From contig NW_025963791.1 in assembly GCF_023055435.1 (NCBI RefSeq), forward strand, positions 29,016,001 through 29,080,000: a DNA stretch of 64,000 nucleotides, given 5' to 3'. A program made the position numbers and the translations under genes. This document shows, piece by piece, positions 5,854-49,400 of the stretch. Position 1 is the stretch's first letter; the number at the start of each line of letters is the position of its first letter. The stretch comes from Haliotis rufescens (Eukaryota). Under the pieces are notes generated by a model. The model had not been told where the DNA came from and did not search any database. It saw nothing but the letters and a program-made list of their open reading frames with translations.

Positions 5854-6015
5854 GGGGCGGTCGGGTAGCCTAGTGGTTAAAGCGTTCGCTTGTCACGCCG
5901 GTGACCCGGGTTCAATTCCCGACAAGGGTACAATGTGTGAAGCCATTTCTGGTGTCCCCTGCCGTGATATTGCTGGAATATTACTAAAAGCGGCGTAAAA
6001 CCATACTCGCTCACT
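5854..6015 (+). mobile_element. SINE family A (tRNA-Asp-like head, (ACTC)n tail)
   Basis: A box TAGCCTAGTGG, B box GGTTCAATTCC, TSD CATTTTAATGA. Confidence 0.9.
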
Positions 6016-7297: not shown

Positions 7298-7461
7298 GAG
7301 TGAGCGAGTATGGTTTTACGCCGCTTTTAGTAATATTCCAGCAATATCACGACAGGGGACACCAGAAATGGGCTTCACACATTGTTCCCATGTCGGGAAT
7401 TGAACCCGGGTCACCGGCGTGACAAGCGAACGCTTTAACCACTAGGCTACCCGACCGCCCC
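7298..7461 (-). mobile_element. SINE family A (inverted duplicate of the 5854 copy)
   Basis: Shares private variants with 5854-6015. Confidence 0.9.
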
Positions 7462-22476: not shown

Positions 22477-22644
22477 GGGCGGTCGGGTAGCCTAGTGGTT
22501 AAAGCGTTCGCTCGTCACGCCGAAGACCCGGGTTCGATTCCCGACATGGGTACAATGTGTGAAGCCCATTTCTGGTGTCCCCCGCCGTGATATTGCTGGA
22601 ACATTGCTAAAAGCGCCGTAAAACCATACTCACTCACTCACTCA
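22477..22644 (+). mobile_element. SINE family A
   Basis: Near-consensus copy; TSD TTGTATATGCAGTG. Confidence 0.92.
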
Positions 22645-36883: not shown

Positions 36884-38188
36884 TATACTTTGACACACTA
36901 CACATGTGAGAAGAGCTAACTTTATTACTTTTCTAAGATGCCGAATTTAAGACTGACCTTGTGTTTTATTGGTGCTGGGTTTATCTGACGGGCTCTTCTA
37001 CCTTATTGCATGCACCCATACCTTTAAAGACATTTACATCAAGTAATACAACACCACTGAAAAATGTTTTTGTTTATTAAAAACACTAGTAGATACTATT
37101 TCGTTAACCGACCAGTGTGTGGTTATTCATAATCCCATGCAGCATTAAGTAGGATATAAACTAAAGTTTTTATATTAACTTGCTTCAATTGAATCATGTG
37201 ACTCGAAACATCCACAGGTGCATTGCGGGGCCGAGCTGACATGACCTGTGCAGAAGTGCAGTCACGCTTGTTATAGTGAGTTGAGGTGTTTTCTGTCGTA
37301 CAAGTTGCAACCAGAGACGTATATACGTCTTTGTTGCATCTTTTTGTCCGCCACAAATGTGAACAGACTGCAGCAACCGCAATCCATAAAACAGTGTGCT
37401 TATCGAGTTGGTTGCTACATGAGACATACCGTAACCGACGTCATCGACGATATGGCGTCGTCGTGGGACGAACATCACAGGGGAAGAGTAACATCGGTCG
37501 TTTTGTTCGGCTGCCGTACATTGGTAAAAAATGAGTGACTGAGTGAGGTGGGTTTAACGCCGCTTTTAACAGTATTCCAGTAATATCACGGCGTGTCAGC
37601 TAAGTGATGCAAGTCTCAGACGTTTACCTCTTCGGTGAAACCCACGAGCACGGGTATGGTGGTAACAAAGTAATATGCAATGTATTGCAAATATCATTCA
37701 ACGTTTGTTGTGGGTACATGTTGCAAAGTTGATGAAGGTTAAAACAATCCATTCCCTTCATTATTGGTACGTATTGCATTCATTATTGCAGTGAATTCCT
37801 CTCAATATCAATTTGAATGAACAAATATGAAATCATGTGTTTGTGTACAACACATATATCATGATGAGTTAGTGTGATCAGATATATTACGTTGATATAT
37901 ATATTAACTGTTTAAAGTTTCCAATATACAGCTGAAATATTTGTAGGTAATACATGTTAATACAATCCGTCTAGTGTGTATAATCTCTATACATTAAACT
38001 CTAGACATCGAAGGTTATAGGAGAAGGTTATGTCCACAGTATGTGATTGTTTTTTGAAAATACCGGGCAAAAGAAAGTATACACTTGAAAATTGGATTTG
38101 ACCACAAATTACAAACGTTGCCAAGCGTTACTAGGCTGACAACAGTCGCCGACCCTCGCAAACTGCAGGTCCAATGATGGACAATATA

Positions 38189-38392
38189 AGGTCTTTGAAA
38201 GGTGATTCCCGTAAGGAAGAGAATGTATGGATGTCAACTTCTTTATAATGAGGAACACAACGTTTCGGAGTATATGCTTACTCCTTCATCAGGTGAAAGA
38301 GTAAGCATTCACGTGATGAAGGAGTAAACATATACTCCGAAACGTTGTGTTCCTCATAATAAAGAAGTTGACATCCATATATTCTCTTCCTT
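38189..38392. mobile_element. Second copy of the palindromic PLE/hammerhead insert, carried along by the segmental duplication
   Basis: Same arms; TSD ATGGACAATATA; minus motif 38256-38295 intact; plus motif has C->G in the core at 38313. Confidence 0.8.
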
Positions 38393-38790
38393 ATGGACAA
38401 TATATAAAATAACACGCAAGTAACTCGAAATAACGGATTATCTGTACATGGCGCGGCACTTTTAATATCAATTCACTCGGGCCAGATCATCCGTGATTTC
38501 TTGTAGCTCGTTGGTTGCATATGTAATAACATCCGTGTATGAATGACATAGTGTCTTGCTAACTACGTAGTGAGTAGGATATGCTCACCGAATCTCAAAG
38601 TGCCATTCATTGTGTACTAATAATCATTGAAAAACCATAAAGTGTATGTTAAATATACGTACATGATTGTATCGCCTAGCAAAGACATAACTACCCAAGC
38701 GCATATAGTTGTTTTACGTAATGCAGAACTTGAGATAATTACAATCAGGATGTGTTGTGGTTATATGAACAATCAATTGCAAGCGAGTGT

Positions 38791-38875
38791 CTACAGTCTG
38801 GTCACAGTCGACAGGGGTCTCTTAGCTTCAAATTCCCCGTTATTTCCCAGCTTGTGTGATTGGGCCGGCTGTGGT
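38791..38875 (-). pseudogene. Duplicated copy of the last ~28 codons of SLC5A7 ([27 protein letters not shown])
   Basis: Aligns to 42744-42828 with a few substitutions; frame and stop retained. Confidence 0.8.
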
Positions 38876-39859
38876 AGCAAAGTAAAAATAAAATTGTTAT
38901 CTCTTATCAAGGTTTTTTCTCTCAGTCTGTCATAGTGGGAGAGTCCATTCATACTGAAAGTAATGGGAGCTCATTGGAGACAGCGACTGGTGCATAACAT
39001 TGTTTCGATAATACTGTAGGCAATGTGCGCTGTAGGCGATAGTAGACCTAACCATGTGGACAGACTGCAGCAACTCTAATCCATAAAACAGTGTGCTTAC
39101 CAAGTTGGTTGCGCTACATGAAATGATACCGTAACCGACGTAAATCGACGGCCTAGGGCGTGATATGGCGTCGCCGTGGGACGAACATCACAGGGGAAGA
39201 AAAACATCGGTCGTTTTGTTCGGCTGCTGTATATTGCTAAATGCCATACGCTAATCAACATGACTTATGTACATGTGATCATGAGGCAAAAACGCCCGCC
39301 TCGGACAATTTTATGACTGCTGTGGCTAGGACACAGTGGTTTGACTATGTTTAAGATAAGCCTGCGGCACGAGAGATGGTTAACATAATCGTGACGTAAT
39401 TCCTCCCCACGTAATAATATTCAACTTTTCGACAAATTTAAAGGAACTACTTCACCGAAAATTGATATTGATGTGCCATCTTGCTTGACAGTAATGAAAT
39501 AACGATGTTCCCAAGAATACGTTATATCACCGGGGAGGAAGTTTGAACAGCGCCATGACACCAGTCCATGTAACATAACTTAAAAAGTGGACTATATGTC
39601 AGGATAAACTACAGTTGGTGCCTTTGATCTTTTAGCGAAGCATTTTAGAATTCCTGATACAGGCATAAGAATATGATTGCAAGTAAATGCATCTTATCTC
39701 TTGCAGTTTTTGAAGATACTTCTATCTTGCATTTAGTCGGCCTATTGTTTAGATTATTGCATATTAGATAGAAGATTAACGAACGTTTCATTGACACATA
39801 TGTTTTAGTTTGATAACGATGTTGGATGTTTTTCTGAATATTTTGCTGTATGATGGAAC

Positions 39860-40383: not shown

Positions 40384-41011
40384 AGTGGCAGTTGACGAAA
40401 ATAAACATCGCGGTTATAAATTGACAATGGACCCGAATCAGATGTAGGGCAAAATATTTATAAGCAAGCCAAGATTGAAAAATCAAAACAAGGTTGACTG
40501 AAATATTGAACGCAAAAATACCCCAAATGCTCGAGAGTATATTTATGCGGTAATAGCATGTGGTATCGATGAAGATACAGACACATGAATTACAGATACA
40601 TCAGGAACACATGTATTGAACACACCATGGATAAAAAAAATCATTTCTACTTTGCAATAATTCATCAAACATCCATGACAATAAATGACATAATTGATGT
40701 AGATTAAAAACAGCAGCGTCTGGAACGATAGGCGATGATGGTGGCGTATATCTCGCAGTGCATGTAGGAAAAACTTTGGGTAATACTGGATACAGTTTTT
40801 AACACAAGCTTTAACACCCAATACATACTGTTAAGCACAGTGTATTAGTCACCACGACAGCCATTCATAAGAAAGCATTTTCTTCCTCTTTACAAATTCA
40901 AAGTTGTGTTTAAAGTCTACAGTGAATGAGTTTATTCCGTAAAGGGGCCACCGGCCCATTAAACAATGTACAGTGGTTTGATCAGTTCATCGTACATAGC
41001 GCTGACTATTA

Positions 41012-41270
41012 GTGAGTGAGTTGGGTTTAACGCCGCTTTTAACAGTATTCCAGTAATATCACGGCGAGTCAGCTTAATATGTGTGGAAAGCACGAAGTGA
41101 TGCAGGTCTCAGACGTATACCACGAGCACGGGTATGGTACTGACAAACCTTTTAACATAATCGGGGCGAACTGGGATTCGAACCCACAATCATAGGCTTC
41201 TGGCGTGCCAAGGGACGCAACTCTGCACAGGGAATCGCAGCGCCTGAGGCGACTGGGCCACCCGTGCCCC
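41012..41270 (-). mobile_element. SINE family C
   Basis: Family match; TSD CGCTGA(C/T)TATTA. Confidence 0.87.
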
Positions 41271-42208
41271 TCCGCTGATTATTACATCAGGGGACCGATT
41301 AACAAAGGGGACCCGCAAGCCACGAACGTTCTTGAGTCTAGTTCGTGGTCAATACTCATCGGAGTGCTGAGAAGGATGCACAAACGGTTATTAAGACCCT
41401 AAGTGCAGCCTTTGGATGCACATAGGTATTTGGAGTATAAAGATTGCAGAGTGCAATTCCCGTGCTTACTTGTATGCTAGGATGACAATAGTTGTAGCAA
41501 CGATGTCATTGTAATAGTGGACCAACATTTATCGTTGGCCTCTCGATGTATGTTGTACCCTGGAAAATGTTATCCACATGTATGTCACTTTTTTAATTCA
41601 TAGACAACAGATACCCTGCAAGTCACAAAGTAGTATGCAATGTATTGCAAATATCATTCAACGTTTGTTGTGGGTACATGTTGCAAAGTTGATGAAGGTT
41701 AAAACAATCCATTCCCTTCATTATTGGTACGTATTGCAATCATTATTGCAGTGAATTCCTCTCAATATCAATTTGAATGAACAAATATGAAATCATGTGT
41801 TTGTGTAGAACACATATATGATGGTGTGTTAGTGTGATCAGATATATTACGTTGATATATATATTAACTGTTTAAAGTTTCCAATATACAGCTGAAATAT
41901 TTGTAGGTAATACATGTTAATACAATCCGTCTAGTGTGTAGAATCTAAACTCTAGACATCGAAGGTTATAGGAGAAGGTTATGTCCACAGTATGTGTTTG
42001 TTTTTTGCAAATACCGGGCAAAAGAAAGTATACACTTGAAAATTGGATTTGACCACAAATTACAAACGTTGCCAAGCGTTACTAGGCTGACAACAGTCGC
42101 CGACCCTCGCAAACTTCAGGTCCAAAACTATGGACAATATAAGGTCTTTGAAAGGTGATTCCCGTAAGGAAGAGAATGTATGGATGTCAACTTCTTTATA
42201 ATGAGGAA

Positions 42209-42248
42209 CACAACGTTTCGGAGTATGTGCTTACTCCTTCATCAGGTG
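42209..42248 (-). ncRNA. Minimal type-I hammerhead ribozyme motif on the SLC5A7 sense strand
   Basis: Reverse complement reads CACCTGATGAAGGAGTAAGCACATACTCCGAAACGTTGTG, core intact. Confidence 0.65.
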
Positions 42249-42262
42249 AAAGAGTAAGCATT

Positions 42263-42302
42263 CACCTGATGAAGGAGTAAGCATATACTCCGAAACGTTG
42301 TG
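42263..42302 (+). ncRNA. Minimal type-I hammerhead ribozyme motif (PLE-type)
   Basis: Core CUGAUGA and GAAA; helix II GGAGUA/UACUCC; helix I CAC/GUG; palindromic ACGU helix III; putative GUU cleavage triplet. Confidence 0.65.
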
Positions 42303-42743
42303 TTCCTCGTAATAAAGAAGTTGACATCCATATATTCTCTTCCTTATGGACAATATATAAAATAACACGCAAGTAACTCGAAATAACGGATTATCTGTAC
42401 ATGACGCGGCTCTTTTAATATCAATTCACTCGGGCCAGATCATCCGTGATTTCTTGTAGCTCGTTGGTTGCATATGTAATAACATTTGTGTATGAATGAC
42501 ATAGTGTCTTGCTAACTACGTAGTGAGTAGGATATGCTCATCGAATCTTAAAGTGCCATTCATTGTGTACTAATAAACATTGAAAAACCATAAAGTGTAA
42601 TACTATGTTAAATATACGTACATGATTGTATCGTCTTGCAAAGACATAACTACCCAAGCGTATATAGTTGTCTTACGTAATGCAGAACTTGAGATAATTA
42701 CAATCAGGATGAGTTGTGGTTATATGAACAATCAAACAAGTGT

Positions 42744-43418
42744 CTACAGTCTGGTTACAGTCGACAGGGGTCTTTTAGCTTCAAATTCCCCGTTATATCC
42801 CAGATTGTGTGATGGGGCCGGCTCTGGTTGGAAGACTGGGTTGTCGTGTCCCCTTTTACTCAAGTTGACCTTTCTCTCATGGAGGTCATCGGCGATGTAC
42901 GGTTGGTAGCCAGCGGGCACGTCTGATGGCAGTTTGGCTACCTCAACTGGCGTTGTCGCAGAAGTGGCCAGAATTGTCCTCGGCTTGTCTGAGAAACTGT
43001 TGAAGATGTCGTATTCAATCGGTATAAAACCATTCTTGAAGAGTACGTGGAACAGGTATGAACCTCCTATTACTGTCACAAGGCTGATCAGCATGGACAA
43101 AGCTCTAAAGGGAAAGCGTTGACCGGCATCCTCGTCGTACCACGGGTAGATAATTGTTGGTGGCAAGCCAAGCCCCGGTTCCCCACCCAGCAGTCGGAAG
43201 ATCAGACCAATGAGGAAGCCGAGCAAGGACCCGTATGCGTTAGTGTCGCGAAGGTACACTGCGCATGTTAGTTGAGGGAAGAGGATGACGAACACGAGGT
43301 CTGAACACAGGTAGAAGAGATAGTAGATTGATTTTACTCTTATTGCCATGGCGCATGCGCAACATGCCATGGCAAACTGGGTAAATCGCATAACCCAAAT
43401 TGTCATACGATCGGAAGT
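42744..43418 (-). CDS. SLC5A7: SLC5A7 last coding exon ([11 protein letters not shown]...STVTRL*)
   Basis: CTTTCAG| acceptor; TAG at 42746-42744. Confidence 0.93.
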   Translation of the reverse strand, partial: TSDRMTIWVMRFTQFAMACCACAMAIRVKSIYYLFYLCSDLVFVILFPQLTCAVYLRDTNAYGSLLGFLIGLIFRLLGGEPGLGLPPTIIYPWYDEDAGQRFPFRALSMLISLVTVIGGSYLFHVLFKNGFIPIEYDIFNSFSDKPRTILATSATTPVEVAKLPSDVPAGYQPYIADDLHERKVNLSKRGHDNPVFQPEPAPSHNLGYNGEFEAKRPLSTVTRL

Positions 43419-46400
43419 CTGAAAGATGAAAAAACGTTATGTAAATTATTAAGAATTGACTTTCACACATTGGAGTATGAACGTTCATAGAGTGAGGGCC
43501 AAACTGTACGAACGTCGCAGCTTGCAGGTTCATACTCCAATGAACTCATACAAATGAACTCAATGAACTCATACAAAGTGAAAGTTATTATGATAATCAA
43601 TCACTATTGTTTACCTCGAAGGAGGTAGCGGTAGATCTATACACAGTTGTATTACAGTGGCGCGTGTGACTTCATGTTTACACTGACAGCCATAAAACAA
43701 ACAGCTGTGTCGCGGAATAAAATAGTTCCACAAAAGAGTGGTGACATGAGCGTACATATGGTCCACGGGTTCGTTCCCCGCATGTGTACAATGTGTGAAA
43801 CGCATTTCTGGTGTTCCCCGCCGTTATATTGCTGGAATAGTGCTGAAAGCGGCGTAAAAAAATATTCACTCCTCACAATCGAAATACCATATGACCTAAA
43901 TCTAGCTAAACTGATAGATTTGAATTATTCACGAAGTTTATACAAGTTATGTCGAAATGAAACCATGATATATAGTACGAACTGATGGCAAGACATGATA
44001 ACATAATTTAGCATCATGTTACTTCGATTACCCTGACTATACAAAGGTTAGGCTCAGGGTCATTAATTAGGGACACTCGGTAATAAAAAATATAAAACGG
44101 CTAAACATTAAGACTTAGTGTATGGCCACGAGCTAAATAATCTCCTATTACCGTACCTTCTTCTTGGTGCATCTGGCGTAGACAACGCCGAAGACGTTCC
44201 TGGCGAACATGGAGCTGGCGGAGAGGAGGGAAGAGTCAGTGGACGACATGACGGCGGCGGAGACAGCACCCAGGCCAATAAACGAAACTGCGTCAGGTGT
44301 CAGATAGCGAAGGACTAGGGGCAGCGTTAGTCCCAACTCATCCGACGGAATGGAACCATTTATTTGCTTGTCATAAGCAGTTTGATTCCAGTCTGAAAAT
44401 ATATCCAAAAAGGATCATATTTTTTTACGGAATAAATCATTTATAACATCAGGAACAATAGATAAGGCGAGATTATTTTTTATGACAGGGTAGAATATAC
44501 ATTTTAATTGTTTCTGATTTGAGTTGAGGCGTTCCGTCGCTCCACAGGTTCCTGTGTTGGGATAATTCCCGAAGTGGAATGAAACTAACTGACCAAAACT
44601 AAACAAAATTAAATTGCAATAGAGATACAATGAAAAAATGTAAGTGGCGAGTGATACCGGTAGAATAGGACACGTTTACCCTTTTCGGAAATACTTTGCG
44701 TCATCACTAATGTTCAGTAATCCATTCATAATAATTTCCATTACTACTTTGCCTTTTAGGCCCTATGGTGAGTGAGTGAGTGAGTATGGTTTTACGCCGT
44801 TTTTAACCACAGGAGTCCGTATCTAAAAATAGACGCCCTCGTGCATATTCATGACCATCTTCACACGCGAGCCCGAAGGGAGTCCGTATCTAAAAATAGA
44901 CGCCCTCATGCATATTCATGACCATCTCCCACACGCGAGCCCGAATGAATATGCATGAGGGCGTCTATTTTTAGATACGGACTCCCCTTCGGGCTCGCGT
45001 GTGGAGATGGTCATGAATATGCACGAGGGCGTCTGTTTTTAGATACGGACATCTGTGGCTTAACACCTTGTACCCATGTCGGGATTCGAACCCGGGTCTT
45101 CGGCGTGACGAGCGAACGCCTTAACCACGAGGCTACCCGACCGCCCCTTAGGCCCTATGGAATTTGTATTGGCAAATATTCAAGGCTGGTCATTCTCTGG
45201 CGTTGACGTTTTGAAATAATAATAAGGCCACGGAATCTAACAAATTCATTGACATTCGGCCAAATTTGAGAATATTTTTTATATAACATTTTATATTACT
45301 TTATTGCTCTTGCACCTACCTGTGTTGGCTGCGATGGCTCCGATCAACACTGCTGGTACAGCCATAAACATGCATCCGAACCCTCCCACGAAGGACAGAA
45401 TACGGGCCACCTTCACCGTTCTCGCGGACAGCACACGTTGGAAATATACCTGATATAAGACATATACATCAATAAATAAATTGCAAGTAATACCATGCCA
45501 TTTGATTGGCTAACCAAGCTATTCTTTTTCCGAAAAAGAAACTAGGCCATCCCCACTAACGGGCTACTGTTTCTTGATTATAATATAACGTTCAATTGTT
45601 TATTTTGTAATTATTGACTTAAATATGTTTTTGCGTGTATGGAGTTATATATGTAAAAAAAACTTATGCGCACACTTTGCGTTACACAGTTCCCATCCAG
45701 GTTTTTACGTTTACCCTTCCATAAACGCAAAACAATATTGAAGTAATTTTTTTAAATGAACACAACCTTATCTCTCAAAGGTTTGTTTTAATATAACATT
45801 GTAAAAGAATTAAAATAAATACAAATTTAATAGAGAACAGCTGTTCGATTGAGCTGAGGTGAACTTGACTTCAATTGACCATGAAAAATCGTCCGTCGTT
45901 TTGCTTCGAAGCGGGGTATAAGAGATTTATTCTGCCTCTCAGAAATTCGCGTGAAGCTTGCCTTGTTCGTGGCGGGGTATAAGGGATTTATTTTGTCCCG
46001 CTGAGACATTAATTTCCCAACGTGGGATACATAGTATTTTCTCAAGATCACTGGGACTAATCTGATCATTCTGACATGGAGGTATGAGAACGGCGTTTTG
46101 TCCTATGCTTCTTGACTTGGAAAGGGTTTAGTTTTACGCAAAACGGTAAGACAACAGAGCAACTTCAAAACAAATTTCGGTATTGCAATATCGGCATTGC
46201 TGTATAAAAGAAGTTGCGCATGTTCTGGTACAACAGATCCACTGAGCTTATATATAATCTCACGGATCATGTGTGCAAACTCGAACTATTTATCAAAACA
46301 TTTGTGAAAACACACTATTTACTTGGAGAAATGGTCTAATAAGTATATAAAATGGTATGATCGGAATGGTGAATCAGGTGAAATGGTGTTAAATGGATGT

Positions 46401-49400
46401 CAATGGAAATCAAGGTTTTTACCAATTTTATTTCATTTGTTTTGCTGCAGGTACATTACGTCGTCCTGTATAAGATCGAGTATGTGAGTTAGTGAATGGA
46501 TGAATATTGGTGTTCGCCGCATTTAGTAATATTCAAGTAATATCACGGCCGGGGACACCAGCGAAAGGCTTCACACATTGTACCCATGTTGGGAACCGAG
46601 CCTGGGTTTTCGGCGTGAAAAGCAAACGGTTTAACCATTAGGCTACCTACCGCCCCATTATGGACCAGACGAACCAGTGACTGATATGAGCATAGTTAAA
46701 CGCCGTCAGTGTACAATGACACGCAACAAATCAAGCCACAGCTCTTCACAACCTGATCCTTTCATTCACTTCTTACGACAGACATATGACGTATTGTAGA
46801 CCAACCCTAGCCGGTCGGGTAGCTTAGTGGTTAAAGCGTTCGCTCGTCACGCCGAAGACCCGGGTTCGATTCCCGACATGAGTACAAAGTGTTAAGCCCA
46901 TTTCTGGTGTCCCCCGCCGTGATATTGCTGGGATATTGCTAAAAACGGCGTAAAACCATACTCACTCACTCACTCACCCTCGAACCCTAGCCCGGAATCT
47001 CCACTGGATGTTTCTACATAGATTATCACAAGCACAGCAATGTTCTTTGTTGGAATGTCACGAGAAGCGTTAGTTCGGTGGTGGTCGTACCTACCTGCCA
47101 AGGAATACCCCCGAAAATGAGCAGTAAAAAGGTGTCCATGTAGATCCCTATATCAGTCGTAGCGACCTCTCCGATCCACGACGACGACGACGACGACGAC
47201 GATGAAGACGACGAGGAGTCGACGATGATGGACCTTGAAGCCGGGTTGGTCATAGCAAAGGGTACGCTCACCCACTGGACCACAAAGCAAACGTATTTAC
47301 AAGCAGACAAATTATACATAGATTATTTGCCGAGTGTGCTTCCCCTGGTAATACGATCGTAAATATCTACATGTTTATATGGAATGTGAGCCTATGGTGA
47401 AATGCAAAATACATACTTTTTATTCCTAATGTGGGATATTTACGTTATGGAAACAAACAAGGGTGATAGCCACTTTATCATTCAATGTCAATCTTAAAAT
47501 CATAGATGGTTTAGATAAGGCTTGTTAATAAGCTGCTATCAACCTCCAGGCTAGTTTATCGTAATACAGTAAACTACGGTTATAACGAACTCAAAGGGAC
47601 CACTAACTTTAGTTTGTTATGACCGTAGTTCGTTATAAGCATATATACAGTATAACAATAGCAAATAGTCGGGACAAAATAATCAGTTCGTTATATCCGT
47701 CAGTTCGTTATAAGCGTGTTCGTTACAAACGTACTTTACTGTAGTTAATTGCGTATCCACTTATTATAATAAACGTATCAACGTCTTGGTAAATGTGAAT
47801 ATATTCGACATGTGCCTCACCAAATTACAATCTTAAGCGTTCATTCCATGTATCAGCTAGAGAATATATTTTCTGTCATTTTCATGATAAGGAAATATTA
47901 TGACTGTAATATGTTTTTCTAATCTTTCATTCCGAATATGCTCAGAATGGCCGCTTGTGAAAATCGGTGTACTGTCATTTCGCACAATTGCATCGCATTT
48001 TACTTCTTTTACTTACAAGCCCCACAAAAATGCAGATGAGTTGAACTACATCGGTGTAAGCCACGGAATACAGTCCCCCGACCAGCGTGTACATCAGGGA
48101 TATGCCAGCCGAGATGATGATGGAGATGGTCGTGTCAATGTCAAGGATAACGGCAAGTGTTGCCCCTTAAAAGGCAAGGTCGCATCGGCTAGAAAGGACA
48201 TTCTTAAGTGACACGAATACAAATATATGCTGACTGAGATTGTATTGTATTTGTTTCCAAGGCGCGGTGGACGGTAACTACCAGACTCACATCTAGGCTC
48301 TGAAATGACCATATCTTACGGAAAAAAACCAGTTGTGAAATTATCTTAATAAAAATATAATACAAAGGGGCACAGAGACTCTCTTCATTTTCGGATACTG
48401 CAGTAATCTATACTTGCCAATATTCCAGCAATATAAAAAAAAGTCGTGTCCATAGGAATATTGGATGTAACATATGTTTATCAGTGTCGTGTCATTGTCC
48501 GGATAACGTGGAAGTAAAGATTATCAAAAGCTTAAGCAATGAACAGGAAAAATTCGGAATTCACTTGGTAAGAGGTGAGTTGAAATGGGGTTGAACGCCG
48601 CGTTCAAGATTATTGCACTTTTAAAGCGACTTGCGTGCGTATGGCTGCTTGTATTTGTCCGGGCGAATGATACCATGCCGCAGATCGAACCCCCGACCTT
48701 CCAATCTTGCGGCAGACGCTCTACCACTATCACGGAGTCCGTCTCATTTGGTAAGATAGCGAATATTATTTAGTTGGAGTTGATCGATGCTAAAGTACGT
48801 CATGTTACGAACCTAAGGCAGACAATATAGCAGCTGACCAGAACATCTCTCCCAACAAGGCGGGAATGTACAACAGCGCCCCCATCAAGTCGCCGTACTT
48901 CCGGTTGAAGGGATCCAACATGGTGTTGTACCTGCTTCGTCTCATTTTGTCGGCAAAGAAAATCCCTCCTGTCAGATAAACAAGTGCGTGAGTGTGTTCA
49001 ACAGCATTTCGCATATTTCACGGTGAGTCAGCTAGCTTAATGTGGGCGAAGATCGTTAATATGTACCACTTTGAAGAAAGCCATGAATATGGATATGAAG
49101 CTGACAAACAAAGGATCATTATGATGTCAAATCAGTAGAACCCACCACGATCGGATCCTAACATAGCGACGGGGTGGAACTCTAGACAGCCAATAGAGCC
49201 CCCTTAGTTTGAATCCATGAAATTAGAATAATTTTATTCTTTTTTTCAAAATGATATATTTCTTTGCTTTGCAGTCTCATATTAACATCAACGGACATGC
49301 ACAAGTACGTGGATTTTGATATCTGTATAGATGCATGACCAGACTTACCAAATACCAGGGAGAGCCCATACCCCATCGGTGCCTGGCACCACACGAGGCC

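What the first reader, a model, noticed from the sequence alone, without database searches (positions are those of the whole stretch)
42142..42344. Palindromic double-hammerhead insert in the probable 3' UTR of the choline transporter
Seen: about 400 bp past the SLC5A7 stop codon is a ~200-bp insertion with a 13-bp TSD. It consists of 86-bp inverted arms, each holding an intact minimal hammerhead (helix I CAC/GUG, CUGAUGA, 6-bp helix II, GAAACGUU). Known: Penelope-like element pseudo-LTRs carry such minimal hammerheads, proposed to act as dimers through the palindromic helix III, and often form inverted copies. Inference: if the UTR spans this insert, the mRNA contains a ribozyme masked in a long hairpin. 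It could be cleavable only co-transcriptionally or after unwinding or editing, and would also be a Dicer/ADAR substrate. That would make it a possible mRNA-stability switch.
Basis: partly seen in the sequence, partly recalled or inferred. Interest (0 to 1): 0.8.

Follow-up and report, generated by a model that had tools for sequence, protein, structure and literature searches.

The report
Penelope-type hammerhead stub in transporter UTR
The 200-bp palindrome behind the choline-transporter gene is real and is transcribed as part of the mRNA's 3' UTR. It is an ordinary back-to-back insertion of an abundant Penelope-type retroelement, and its small hammerhead motif is almost certainly inert there, not a built-in mRNA switch.

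Summary
A 203-bp insert (42142-42344) is flanked by a 13-bp target-site duplication. It has 89-nt inverted arms, and each DNA strand carries one intact minimal (Penelope-type) hammerhead.

It is one copy of a young, SINE-like, ORF-less family of up to about 330 nt. A 55-nt motif of the family has 1,105 near-exact hits in the 1.33-Gb genome. The family shows the known hallmarks of Penelope-like element (PLE) insertion:
- variable TSDs of 8-14 bp;
- heavy 5' truncation;
- head-to-head inverted partner copies with a different junction filler in each copy;
- a tail of about 32 nt on exactly one arm.

RNA contigs from three studies show that the choline-transporter (CHT1/SLC5A7-like, minus strand) 3' UTR runs through the insert at undiminished or mildly reduced depth. 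So the mRNA does carry the hairpin.

The "double hammerhead" holds only at the DNA level. The mRNA has one sense hammerhead. Its complement is transcribed first, the duplex is about -143 kcal/mol, and this ribozyme class needs a dimer and is weak or protein-dependent in vitro. The core is no better conserved than its flanks.

A switch role is unsupported. Three clustered A>G differences in one run hint at ADAR editing but are unproven. The insert predates a 3.95-kb tandem duplication, which carries a second copy at 38189-38391. The scan has already found the same kind of element elsewhere in this genome.

The parts
42129..42141 (.). Left copy of the 13-bp target-site duplication TATGGACAATATA
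   Evidence: family D2, 100% identical to 42345-42357
42142..42161 (-). Remnant of the element's 3' 'tail', the stretch between the two reverse-transcription start sites. About 20 nt of the roughly 32 nt remain, with an internal deletion. It marks the minus strand as the sense strand of the tailed arm.
   Evidence: Alignment with 22 other copies that carry the full tail ...TATCACTTCTAAATGCCTTTCAAAGACC. Mapped on a natural full-length copy as ref207-305.
42162..42250 (-). Tailed arm. It is sense on the minus strand, which is also the mRNA strand, and holds the only hammerhead that is sense in the CHT1 mRNA: CAC 42248-46, CUGAUGA 42245-39, bulged A 42238, helix II 42237-32 and 42225-20, GAA 42219-17, ACGU 42216-13, U17 at 42212. 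Predicted cleavage is between 42212 and 42211.
42251..42260 (.). Junction filler AGAGTAAGCA between the two arms. It is a near-repeat of the adjacent helix-II sequence GGAGTAAGCA, which suggests a template switch. The filler differs in every copy of the family.
   Evidence: (D1), (20 loci with fillers of 0-28 nt, nearly all different)
42261..42344 (+). Tail-less arm. It is sense on the + strand and antisense in the mRNA, and ends at the inner reverse-transcription start site (...CTTCCTTA). The + strand hammerhead is at 42263-42302, with predicted cleavage between 42299 and 42300.
42345..42357 (.). Right copy of the target-site duplication
42744..43418 (-). Last coding exon of the CHT1/SLC5A7-like gene, with the stop codon at 42746-42744. 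The splice acceptor at 43418 is joined to 44157 in RNA contigs, and the intron ends are GT..AG on the minus strand.
   Evidence: ORF; human CHT1, PDB 8j74, E 5.4e-37; joint 43418/44157 in X1 and X7
41209..42743 (-). Transcribed 3' UTR that contains the insert. It probably continues through a SINE to at least 40500.
   Evidence: exact-match contigs cover 41421-42043, 41361-41450 and 41209-41390 at exon-level depth. Contigs from both sides enter the insert (42303-, 42334-, 42341- and -42194, -42250, -42297).
38189..38391 (-). Second, 98%-identical copy of the same insertion with the same TSD. It was carried along by a 3.95-kb tandem segmental duplication (37662-38880 matches 41622-42833). Its + strand arm has C3>G (CACGTGATGA).

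Best explanation
The insert is a routine integration product of a young, abundant, non-autonomous Penelope-like (PLE-type) retroelement.

The family. The full element is about 330 nt and has no ORF. It carries a minimal type-I hammerhead about 45 nt upstream of the first of two reverse-transcription start sites, which lie about 32 nt apart.

How the palindrome arose (inferred from anatomy plus published PLE biochemistry). The PLE endonuclease/RT nicked both target strands with a 13-bp stagger and copied the element RNA from both nicks. One cDNA started at the outer site, so it carries the tail. The other started at the inner site, so it has none. Both cDNAs stopped just 5' of the hammerhead, at a hot spot that is probably the RNA's 5' end downstream of a TATA/Inr-like promoter. 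The two cDNAs were joined head-to-head with a short template-switch filler.

Its place in the gene. The insertion landed 400 nt past the stop codon of the minus-strand choline transporter gene, in sense orientation. It was later duplicated with its surroundings. It is transcribed as part of a 3' UTR of at least 1.5 kb (shown).

What it does in the mRNA (inferred from folding, order of transcription, published weak and dimer-dependent activity, and unchanged RNA depth across the site). It forms an 89-bp hairpin. The single sense hammerhead is locked against its complement and has no partner for the obligatory dimeric helix III, so it does not act as a ribozyme.

Any effect on the mRNA would come from the long double-stranded stem, for example ADAR editing, and not from self-cleavage.
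For: Family and copy number:
- At least 2,060 first-look candidates.
- 1,105 hits of a 55-nt motif against 0 in the control.

Anatomy across copies:
- The centre is variable, the tail is on one side only and TSD lengths vary.
- In a sample of 43 loci plus the window copy, taken in list order, about 24 of the 44 are head-to-head pairs, and every pair has the tail on exactly one arm.
- The 3' ends are bimodal, at ref 293-301 (35 arms) and ref 323-333 (30 arms). Of 70 arms, 32 have 5' ends at ref 200-218 and only 2 lie near the ribozyme cleavage site.
- Exact TSDs of 8-14 nt occur in 30 of 65 loci.
- 20 loci have an exact hot-spot junction, with fillers of 0-28 nt, nearly all different.
- Long forms share about 330 nt and have no ORF.

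Published PLE biology:
- An inverted 5'-truncated copy, a 30-40-bp tail at one end and TSDs of 8-10 bp are described PLE hallmarks (PMC8557442 and PMC3846280).
- A PLE protein nicks and extends both strands, and reverse transcription starts at two adjacent internal sites that define the tail (PMC11167929).
- The motif meets all sequence criteria of the PLE min-HHR (PMC4209133).
- PLEs with GIY-YIG endonuclease are present in this genome, with at least 44 matches.

Transcription through the insert: spliced RNA contigs and equal depth on both sides in three studies.

Inertness of the hammerhead:
- The mRNA-sense hairpin folds at -142.9 kcal/mol, and even the isolated sense arm does not fold into helix II at minimum free energy.
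- Core divergence is 4.2%, against 4.4% elsewhere in the element.
Against: - No autonomous PLE with this pLTR/hammerhead was found. None of 30 GIY-YIG loci carries the unit within 1.5 kb, so mobilisation in trans by a PLE is inferred, not shown.
- The twin-nick model is taken from in vitro work on a lizard PLE. That study saw no strand difference in RT start site, whereas here the tail asymmetry is strict.
- Snap-back self-priming is an alternative way to form the junction.
- Contigs cannot show single molecules, RNA ends or the strand. A 17-30% lower depth distal to the insert in two runs could reflect some proximal polyadenylation (ATTAAA at 42419, minus strand) or some cleavage.
- Ribozyme inactivity is inferred, not measured.
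Confidence: 0.85

Rival explanations
1. The masked hammerhead is a conditional mRNA-stability switch: unwinding, editing or co-transcriptional folding exposes the ribozyme, which then cuts the CHT1 3' UTR at 42211/42212.
For: The 3' UTR includes the insert. The sense-strand core is intact. Depth distal to the insert is 17-30% lower in X2 and X7.
Against: - The mRNA has only one sense hammerhead, and helix III (ACGU) can form only between two molecules.
- The complement is transcribed first.
- The stem is worth about -143 kcal/mol.
- In published tests, PLE min-HHRs were inactive as single motifs, showed only low activity as dimers or trimers, or needed the PLE protein.
- X1 shows no loss of depth across the insert.
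- There is no extra conservation of the core.
- The same structure occurs at many unrelated loci.
Confidence: 0.03
2. The 89-bp stem acts as a double-stranded RNA element in the CHT1 3' UTR. It would be a substrate for ADAR editing, and possibly for Dicer or Staufen-type factors, and so influence the fate of the mRNA independently of the ribozyme.
For: A perfect long hairpin lies in a transcribed UTR. In run X1, a contig anchored in the unique flank shows T>C at 42224, 42226 and 42231. That is A>G in mRNA sense, at 51.4 of 72 depth, and these are the only listed changes private to that contig.
Against: - The A>G changes are seen in one study only.
- There is no matched DNA, so an allele or a chimeric contig from another family copy is not excluded.
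- The small-RNA run gave no usable reads (untrimmed 50-nt reads, so no test).
- No functional consequence is shown.
Confidence: 0.12
3. The palindrome is a MITE or foldback DNA transposon, or a hairpin-RNA/miRNA gene, and only looks like a hammerhead by coincidence.
For: Hairpin shape. There are sub-threshold Rfam miRNA matches (MIR6425 at 42 bits against a gathering score of 142, and others).
Against: - TSD length varies from 8 to 14 nt.
- The ends are asymmetric, with the tail on one arm only.
- Solo, 5'-truncated and tandem forms of the same sequence exist.
- The centre differs in each copy.
- All miRNA matches are far below the gathering scores.
Confidence: 0.02

Closest known systems
Minimal hammerhead ribozymes (min-HHR) of Penelope-like element pseudo-LTRs (Cervera & De la Pena 2014, PMC4209133)
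   Same: - Type-I order of strands and a CUGAUGA/GAA core.
[quoted passage not shown]
- A very short helix I (3 bp).
- No closed helix III, but a palindromic ACGU that can pair only between two copies.
- Thousands of dispersed copies, including pairs on opposite strands.
   Different: The carrier here is a short ORF-less element, and no autonomous PLE with this motif was found. Self-cleavage was not tested.
Canonical PLE insertion architecture: inverted 5'-truncated copy plus one-sided tail (Arkhipova 2013, PMC3846280; Craig 2021, PMC8557442; Frangieh 2024, PMC11167929)
   Same: - A head-to-head inverted partner.
- A tail of about 32 nt at one end only.
- TSDs of 8-14 bp.
- Two RT start sites.
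- A TATA/Inr-like motif upstream of the frequent 5' end.
   Different: Both arms are extreme stubs of about 90 nt, so the whole insertion is only a palindrome. In this family the tail asymmetry is strict (24 of 24 pairs), whereas the in vitro study saw no strand bias.
Metazoan non-LTR retrozymes (Cervera & De la Pena 2020, PMC7229834; Li et al. 2026 preprint, 10.64898/2026.07.22.740005)
   Same: Non-autonomous, PLE-related and hammerhead-bearing. The preprint reports that exon-overlapping copies in Xenopus sit mainly in 3' UTRs.
   Different: Retrozymes are tandem repeats of 150-450 bp with canonical hammerheads that yield circular RNAs. Here tandem junctions are rare (5 hits at 3 loci), the tandem unit is 83 nt, the hammerhead is the minimal type, and the window copy is inverted, not tandem.

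Membership tests
PLE minimal hammerhead (min-HHR) | Conserved core CUGANGA ... GAAA with an H17 cleavage nucleotide, in type-I strand order | tested here: met
   Read from the sequence on both strands. The coordinates are given under parts.
PLE minimal hammerhead (min-HHR) | [quoted passage not shown] | tested here: met
   GGAGUA/UACUCC with A 42273 (+ strand) or A 42238 (minus strand) unpaired. The criteria are from PMC4209133.
PLE minimal hammerhead (min-HHR) | No closed helix III, with palindromic positions 15.2-16.2 that allow a dimer | tested here: met
   ACGU directly follows GAA.
PLE minimal hammerhead (min-HHR) | Self-cleavage, as a dimer | not testable with these tools
   This needs in vitro transcription. 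Contigs cannot show RNA ends.
Rfam hammerhead families | Score at or above the gathering threshold of a hammerhead covariance model | tested here: not met
   There is no hammerhead match, even when matches with E-values up to 10 were listed. This is expected, because the Rfam models require a closed helix III.
Penelope-like element insertion (non-autonomous derivative) | Variable-length TSD and 5' truncation, as expected for target-primed reverse transcription | tested here: met
   13 bp here, 8-14 nt across the family, and a range of 5' ends.
Penelope-like element insertion (non-autonomous derivative) | An adjacent inverted 5'-truncated copy and a 30-40-bp tail at one end only | tested here: met
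   About 24 of 44 loci are inverted pairs, all with exactly one tail. The 3' ends are bimodal, about 32 nt apart. In the window copy the tail is partly deleted.
Penelope-like element insertion (non-autonomous derivative) | A cognate autonomous element encoding RT plus GIY-YIG endonuclease | tested here: inconclusive
   GIY-YIG PLEs are present (at least 44 matches), but none of the 30 fetched loci carries this unit.
Non-LTR retrozyme | Head-to-tail tandem repeats flanked by hammerheads that can release a unit-length (circular) RNA | tested here: not met
   The window copy is inverted. Tandem junctions are found at only 3 loci, for example 4 units of 83 nt in L031.
MITE / foldback DNA transposon | Fixed-length TSD and symmetric terminal inverted repeats | tested here: not met
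   TSDs are 8-14 nt. The ends are asymmetric and solo forms exist.
High-affinity choline transporter CHT1/SLC5A7 (host gene) | Sequence homology of the exons to CHT1 and the sodium:solute symporter family | tested here: met
   The last exon matches human CHT1 (PDB 8j74) at E 5.4e-37. Pfam SSF matches two exons, one above the curated cut-off (27.3 bits) and one below it (17.8 bits against 22.8).

The most novel reading that the evidence does not exclude
The 89-bp hairpin, fixed in the CHT1 3' UTR and kept in both duplicated copies, may be a working double-stranded RNA element. It could be hyper-edited by ADAR, or processed into small RNAs, and so tune the amount or localisation of choline-transporter mRNA in cholinergic neurons. 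In the most exotic version, a PLE protein would assist a trans-dimer between this hammerhead and family transcripts, coupling retroelement activity to decay of the transporter mRNA.
Probability: 0.05. Interest if true: 0.55.

Novelty: new member of a known kind. Interest (0 to 1): 0.22.

Why it matters
Mainly as a correct annotation. Palindromes with "twin hammerheads" in this genome are by-products of Penelope-type integration, not designed ribozyme switches, and the scan will meet hundreds more.

Two points have modest wider value:
- The family gives clean genomic statistics for PLE mechanics: two RT start sites about 32 nt apart, a strict one-tail-per-pair rule, a 5'-end hot spot just upstream of the ribozyme, and almost no copies that begin at the ribozyme cleavage site. 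These agree with, and slightly sharpen, the in vitro model of internal initiation.
- This is a documented case of a long perfect hairpin inside the mature 3' UTR of a neuronal transporter mRNA. That makes it a convenient natural substrate for testing ADAR or Dicer action in this animal.

Tried and rejected
- Rfam. No hammerhead model matched. The only matches were sub-threshold miRNA hairpins, rejected as shape matches.
- Autonomous partner. Among 30 GIY-YIG (PLE) loci, none carries this unit. They carry a different min-HHR (CACUGAAGAGCUGUC...GAAAGUACU). The loci with 5.9-kb and 9.3-kb spacing of the motif (L032, L033) turned out to be segmental duplications of host genes, not full-length PLEs. 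The upstream extension of long copies ends at about 330 nt with no ORF.
- Retrozyme reading. An 83-nt tandem array exists, but tandem junctions are rare.
- Selection on the ribozyme. There is no difference in divergence between the core and the rest.
- Small RNAs. The miRNA-seq run laid no reads anywhere on the stretch. Its 50-nt reads were probably untrimmed, so this is no test.
- Proximal polyadenylation. Between the stop codon and the insert on the minus strand there is no canonical AATAAA. There is one ATTAAA, at 42419, and one AATGAA variant, at 42564. RNA depth shows that most transcripts read through.

Full report
**1. The observation**

The sequence at 42142-42344 is as described.
- The repeat finder reports the 13-bp direct repeat TATGGACAATATA at 42129-42141 and 42345-42357, and inverted arms at 42162-42250 and 42261-42349 (89 nt, 94% complementary).
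- The + strand folds into one hairpin of -159.7 kcal/mol (z = -28 against shuffles). The mRNA-sense strand folds at -142.9 kcal/mol.
- Each DNA strand carries one motif in the order CAC / CUGAUGA / A / GGAGUA-loop-UACUCC / GAA / ACGU / U / GUG.
- Rfam finds no hammerhead family there, even when matches with E-values up to 10 were listed. It finds only sub-threshold miRNA-shaped matches. That is expected for a motif lacking a closed helix III.
- The motif is not a chance match. A 55-nt stretch (hammerhead plus downstream sequence) has 1,105 hits at up to 2 mismatches in the 1.33-Gb assembly, against none for the reversed control.

**2. The gene and the strand**

The transporter gene is on the minus strand.
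- Stop-to-stop ORFs give a first exon beginning MAIHIPGL... (about 51059-50730) and a last exon at 43436-42747, with the stop codon at 42746-42744.
- The last exon matches human high-affinity choline transporter 1 (PDB 8j74) at E 5.4e-37.
- Two other exons match Pfam SSF, one above the curated cut-off (27.3 bits) and one below it (17.8 bits against 22.8).

The hammerhead that matters for the mRNA is the minus-strand one, with predicted cleavage between 42212 and 42211.

**3.

The segment 41622-42833 is repeated at 37662-38880 with 90-98% identity.
- The repeat includes the last 27 codons, the proximal 3' region and the insert with the same TSD. The second copy is at 38189-38391.
- The insertion therefore predates a 3.95-kb tandem duplication.

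**4. What the element is**

A whole-genome search gave at least 2,060 first-look candidates. An alignment of 23 copies shows three features that a foldback transposon would not have:
- the centre between the arms differs from copy to copy;
- one arm, and only one, is extended by a conserved tail of about 32-35 nt (...TATCACTTCTAAATGCCTTTCAAAGACC);
- the TSDs differ in length.

I then took 43 loci in list order from the pattern search and mapped them on a natural full-length copy of 333 nt. On that copy the hammerhead core is at ref 215-251.
- The family is a SINE-like element of about 330 nt without an ORF.
- About 24 of the 44 loci (the 43 sampled plus the window copy) are head-to-head inverted pairs. 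Of the rest, 16 are solo copies with or without the tail, 3 look like snap-backs, and there are two loci with tandem 83-nt units (L031 with 4 units plus a tail; L035).
- In all 24 inverted pairs exactly one arm has the tail.
- The outer (3') ends of 70 arms fall into two classes, ref 293-301 (35 arms) and ref 323-333 (30 arms). The 5' ends cluster at ref 200-218 (32 arms), just upstream of CUGAUGA. Only 2 arms begin near the ribozyme cleavage site.
- Exact TSDs of 8-14 nt are detectable at 30 of 65 loci.
- Twenty loci have the same hot-spot junction as the window copy, with fillers of 0-28 nt, nearly all different.
- In the window copy the filler AGAGTAAGCA nearly repeats the neighbouring helix-II sequence (D1), as a template switch would produce.

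**5. Comparison with what is known**

All of these features are described hallmarks of Penelope-like elements:
- heavy 5' truncation, an adjacent inverted 5'-truncated copy, a 30-40-bp tail often present at only one end, and short variable TSDs (PMC8557442 and PMC3846280);
- a TATA box plus Inr-like motif in the pLTR (PMC3846280). The family has TATATAT about 25 nt upstream of the 5'-end hot spot. That this hot spot is a transcription start is my inference.

Frangieh et al. (PMC11167929) showed in vitro that:
- a PLE protein nicks and extends both DNA strands;
- reverse transcription starts at two adjacent internal sites whose spacing defines the tail;
- the hammerhead is not needed for insertion;
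- the hammerhead cleaves only with the protein present.

The hammerhead itself meets every sequence criterion of the PLE min-HHR of Cervera & De la Pena (PMC4209133):
- long helix II with G10.1-C11.1;
- an unpaired base after position 9;
- short helix I;
- palindromic 15.2-16.2.

That paper already noted pairs of min-HHRs on opposite strands 100-700 bp apart. It also found no detectable self-cleavage of a single motif and only low activity in dimeric and trimeric constructs.

PLEs with GIY-YIG endonuclease are present in this genome (at least 44 matches). None of the 30 loci I fetched carries this unit, and they carry a different min-HHR. The autonomous partner is therefore not identified.

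**6. Is it in the mRNA?**

Yes. I laid RNA contigs from three studies on 40500-44500.
- A spliced contig joins 44157 to 43418 (GT..AG on the minus strand). It continues through the last exon and the proximal UTR to 42341 (X1), 42303 (X2) or 42334 (X7), that is, up to or into the insert.
- Exact-match contigs resume in the unique flank (42026 onwards into the insert, and 41421-42043).
- Depth on the far side is close to that of the coding contig:

| Run | Far side | Coding contig |
|---|---|---|
| X1 | 95.2 | 93.8 |
| X2 | 14.3 | 17.3 |
| X7 | 30.9 | 44 |

- Unique intron sequence (43984-44117) has a depth of 0-3.
- The UTR therefore spans the insert and reaches at least 41209, probably 40500.
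- Contigs break inside the insert because it is repetitive. The summed depth there (up to 8,338) comes from many family copies.
- Between the stop codon and the insert on the minus strand there is no canonical AATAAA. There is one ATTAAA, at 42419, and one AATGAA variant, at 42564. At most 17-30% of transcripts could end there.

**7. Does the ribozyme work there?**

Almost certainly not.
- An RNA contains only one sense hammerhead, because the reverse complement of a hammerhead is not a hammerhead.
- In the mRNA the antisense arm (42344 down to 42261) is made first. The sense hammerhead therefore meets its complement as it emerges.
- The duplex is worth about -143 kcal/mol. Even the isolated sense arm does not adopt helix II at minimum free energy.
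- Helix III can form only with a second sense copy.
- Depth does not drop across the site in X1.
- Among 50 arms not selected for the motif, core positions diverge by 4.2% and the rest by 4.4%. The intact core therefore reflects youth, not selection.

**8. What remains open**

- In X1, a contig anchored in the unique flank shows T>C at 42224, 42226 and 42231. That is A>G in mRNA sense, in loop II and the 3' strand of helix II, at 51.4 of 72 depth.
- This is what ADAR editing of a long stem would look like. An allele or a chimeric contig would look the same, and there is no matched DNA.
- The miRNA-seq run gave no reads at all, probably because its 50-nt reads were untrimmed, so it is no test.

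**9. Verdict**

- This is an ordinary Penelope-type head-to-head stub, a new member of a known kind.
- The ribozyme-switch idea is unsupported.
- Earlier follow-ups of this scan reached the same reading for similar palindromes elsewhere in this genome. I reached it independently here.

Noticed in passing
window 37662-38880 and 41622-42833: A tandem segmental duplication of about 3.95 kb carries the last 27 codons of the transporter, its proximal 3' region and the hammerhead insert. The copies are 90-98% identical.
   Followed up: partly
window 42224, 42226, 42231: Three clustered T>C differences, which are A>G in mRNA sense, occur in one RNA run (X1, 51.4 of 72 depth) inside the hairpin. They could be A-to-I editing, an allele or a chimeric contig.
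   Followed up: partly
L031 (G000:C1:5865200-5866500), positions 438-808: A direct tandem array of four 83-nt units, each with the minimal hammerhead, is followed by one tail and flanked by a 9-bp TSD. The unit is much shorter than described retrozyme units (150-450 bp). Such junctions occur at only 3 loci in the genome.
   Followed up: partly
L038, L045, L053, L063 (GIY-YIG loci of G000): A second Penelope-type family has a different minimal hammerhead (CACUGAAGAGCUGUCAUGAGACAGCGAAAGUACU, with palindromic AGUACU). It is also found on both strands near the endonuclease domain.
   Followed up: no
window 40902-41303; also 46813-46884, 55224-55295, 5865-5923, 7392-7450, 22481-22552, 45071-45142: The six named intervals are tRNA-derived SINE copies, which Rfam matches as tRNA just above threshold. 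A highly repeated stretch at 40902-41303 lies inside the 3' UTR, probably the same SINE, and collects very high summed RNA depth (up to 2x10^5), which shows that the repeat is abundant in transcripts.
   Followed up: no
window 42014-42055: A short repeated motif in the 3' UTR breaks the RNA contigs, with loose ends at 42014, 42024 and 42055 in all three runs. It is probably the edge of another dispersed repeat.
   Followed up: no
L032 (G000:C57:533500-542500) and L033 (G000:C112:62473500-62483499): Copies of the element recur every 5.9-9.7 kb because the host segments are tandemly duplicated. In L033 the duplicated segment holds an ORF that, from its sequence alone, looks like a sulfatase gene. 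This suggests that tandem gene duplication is frequent in this genome.
   Followed up: no
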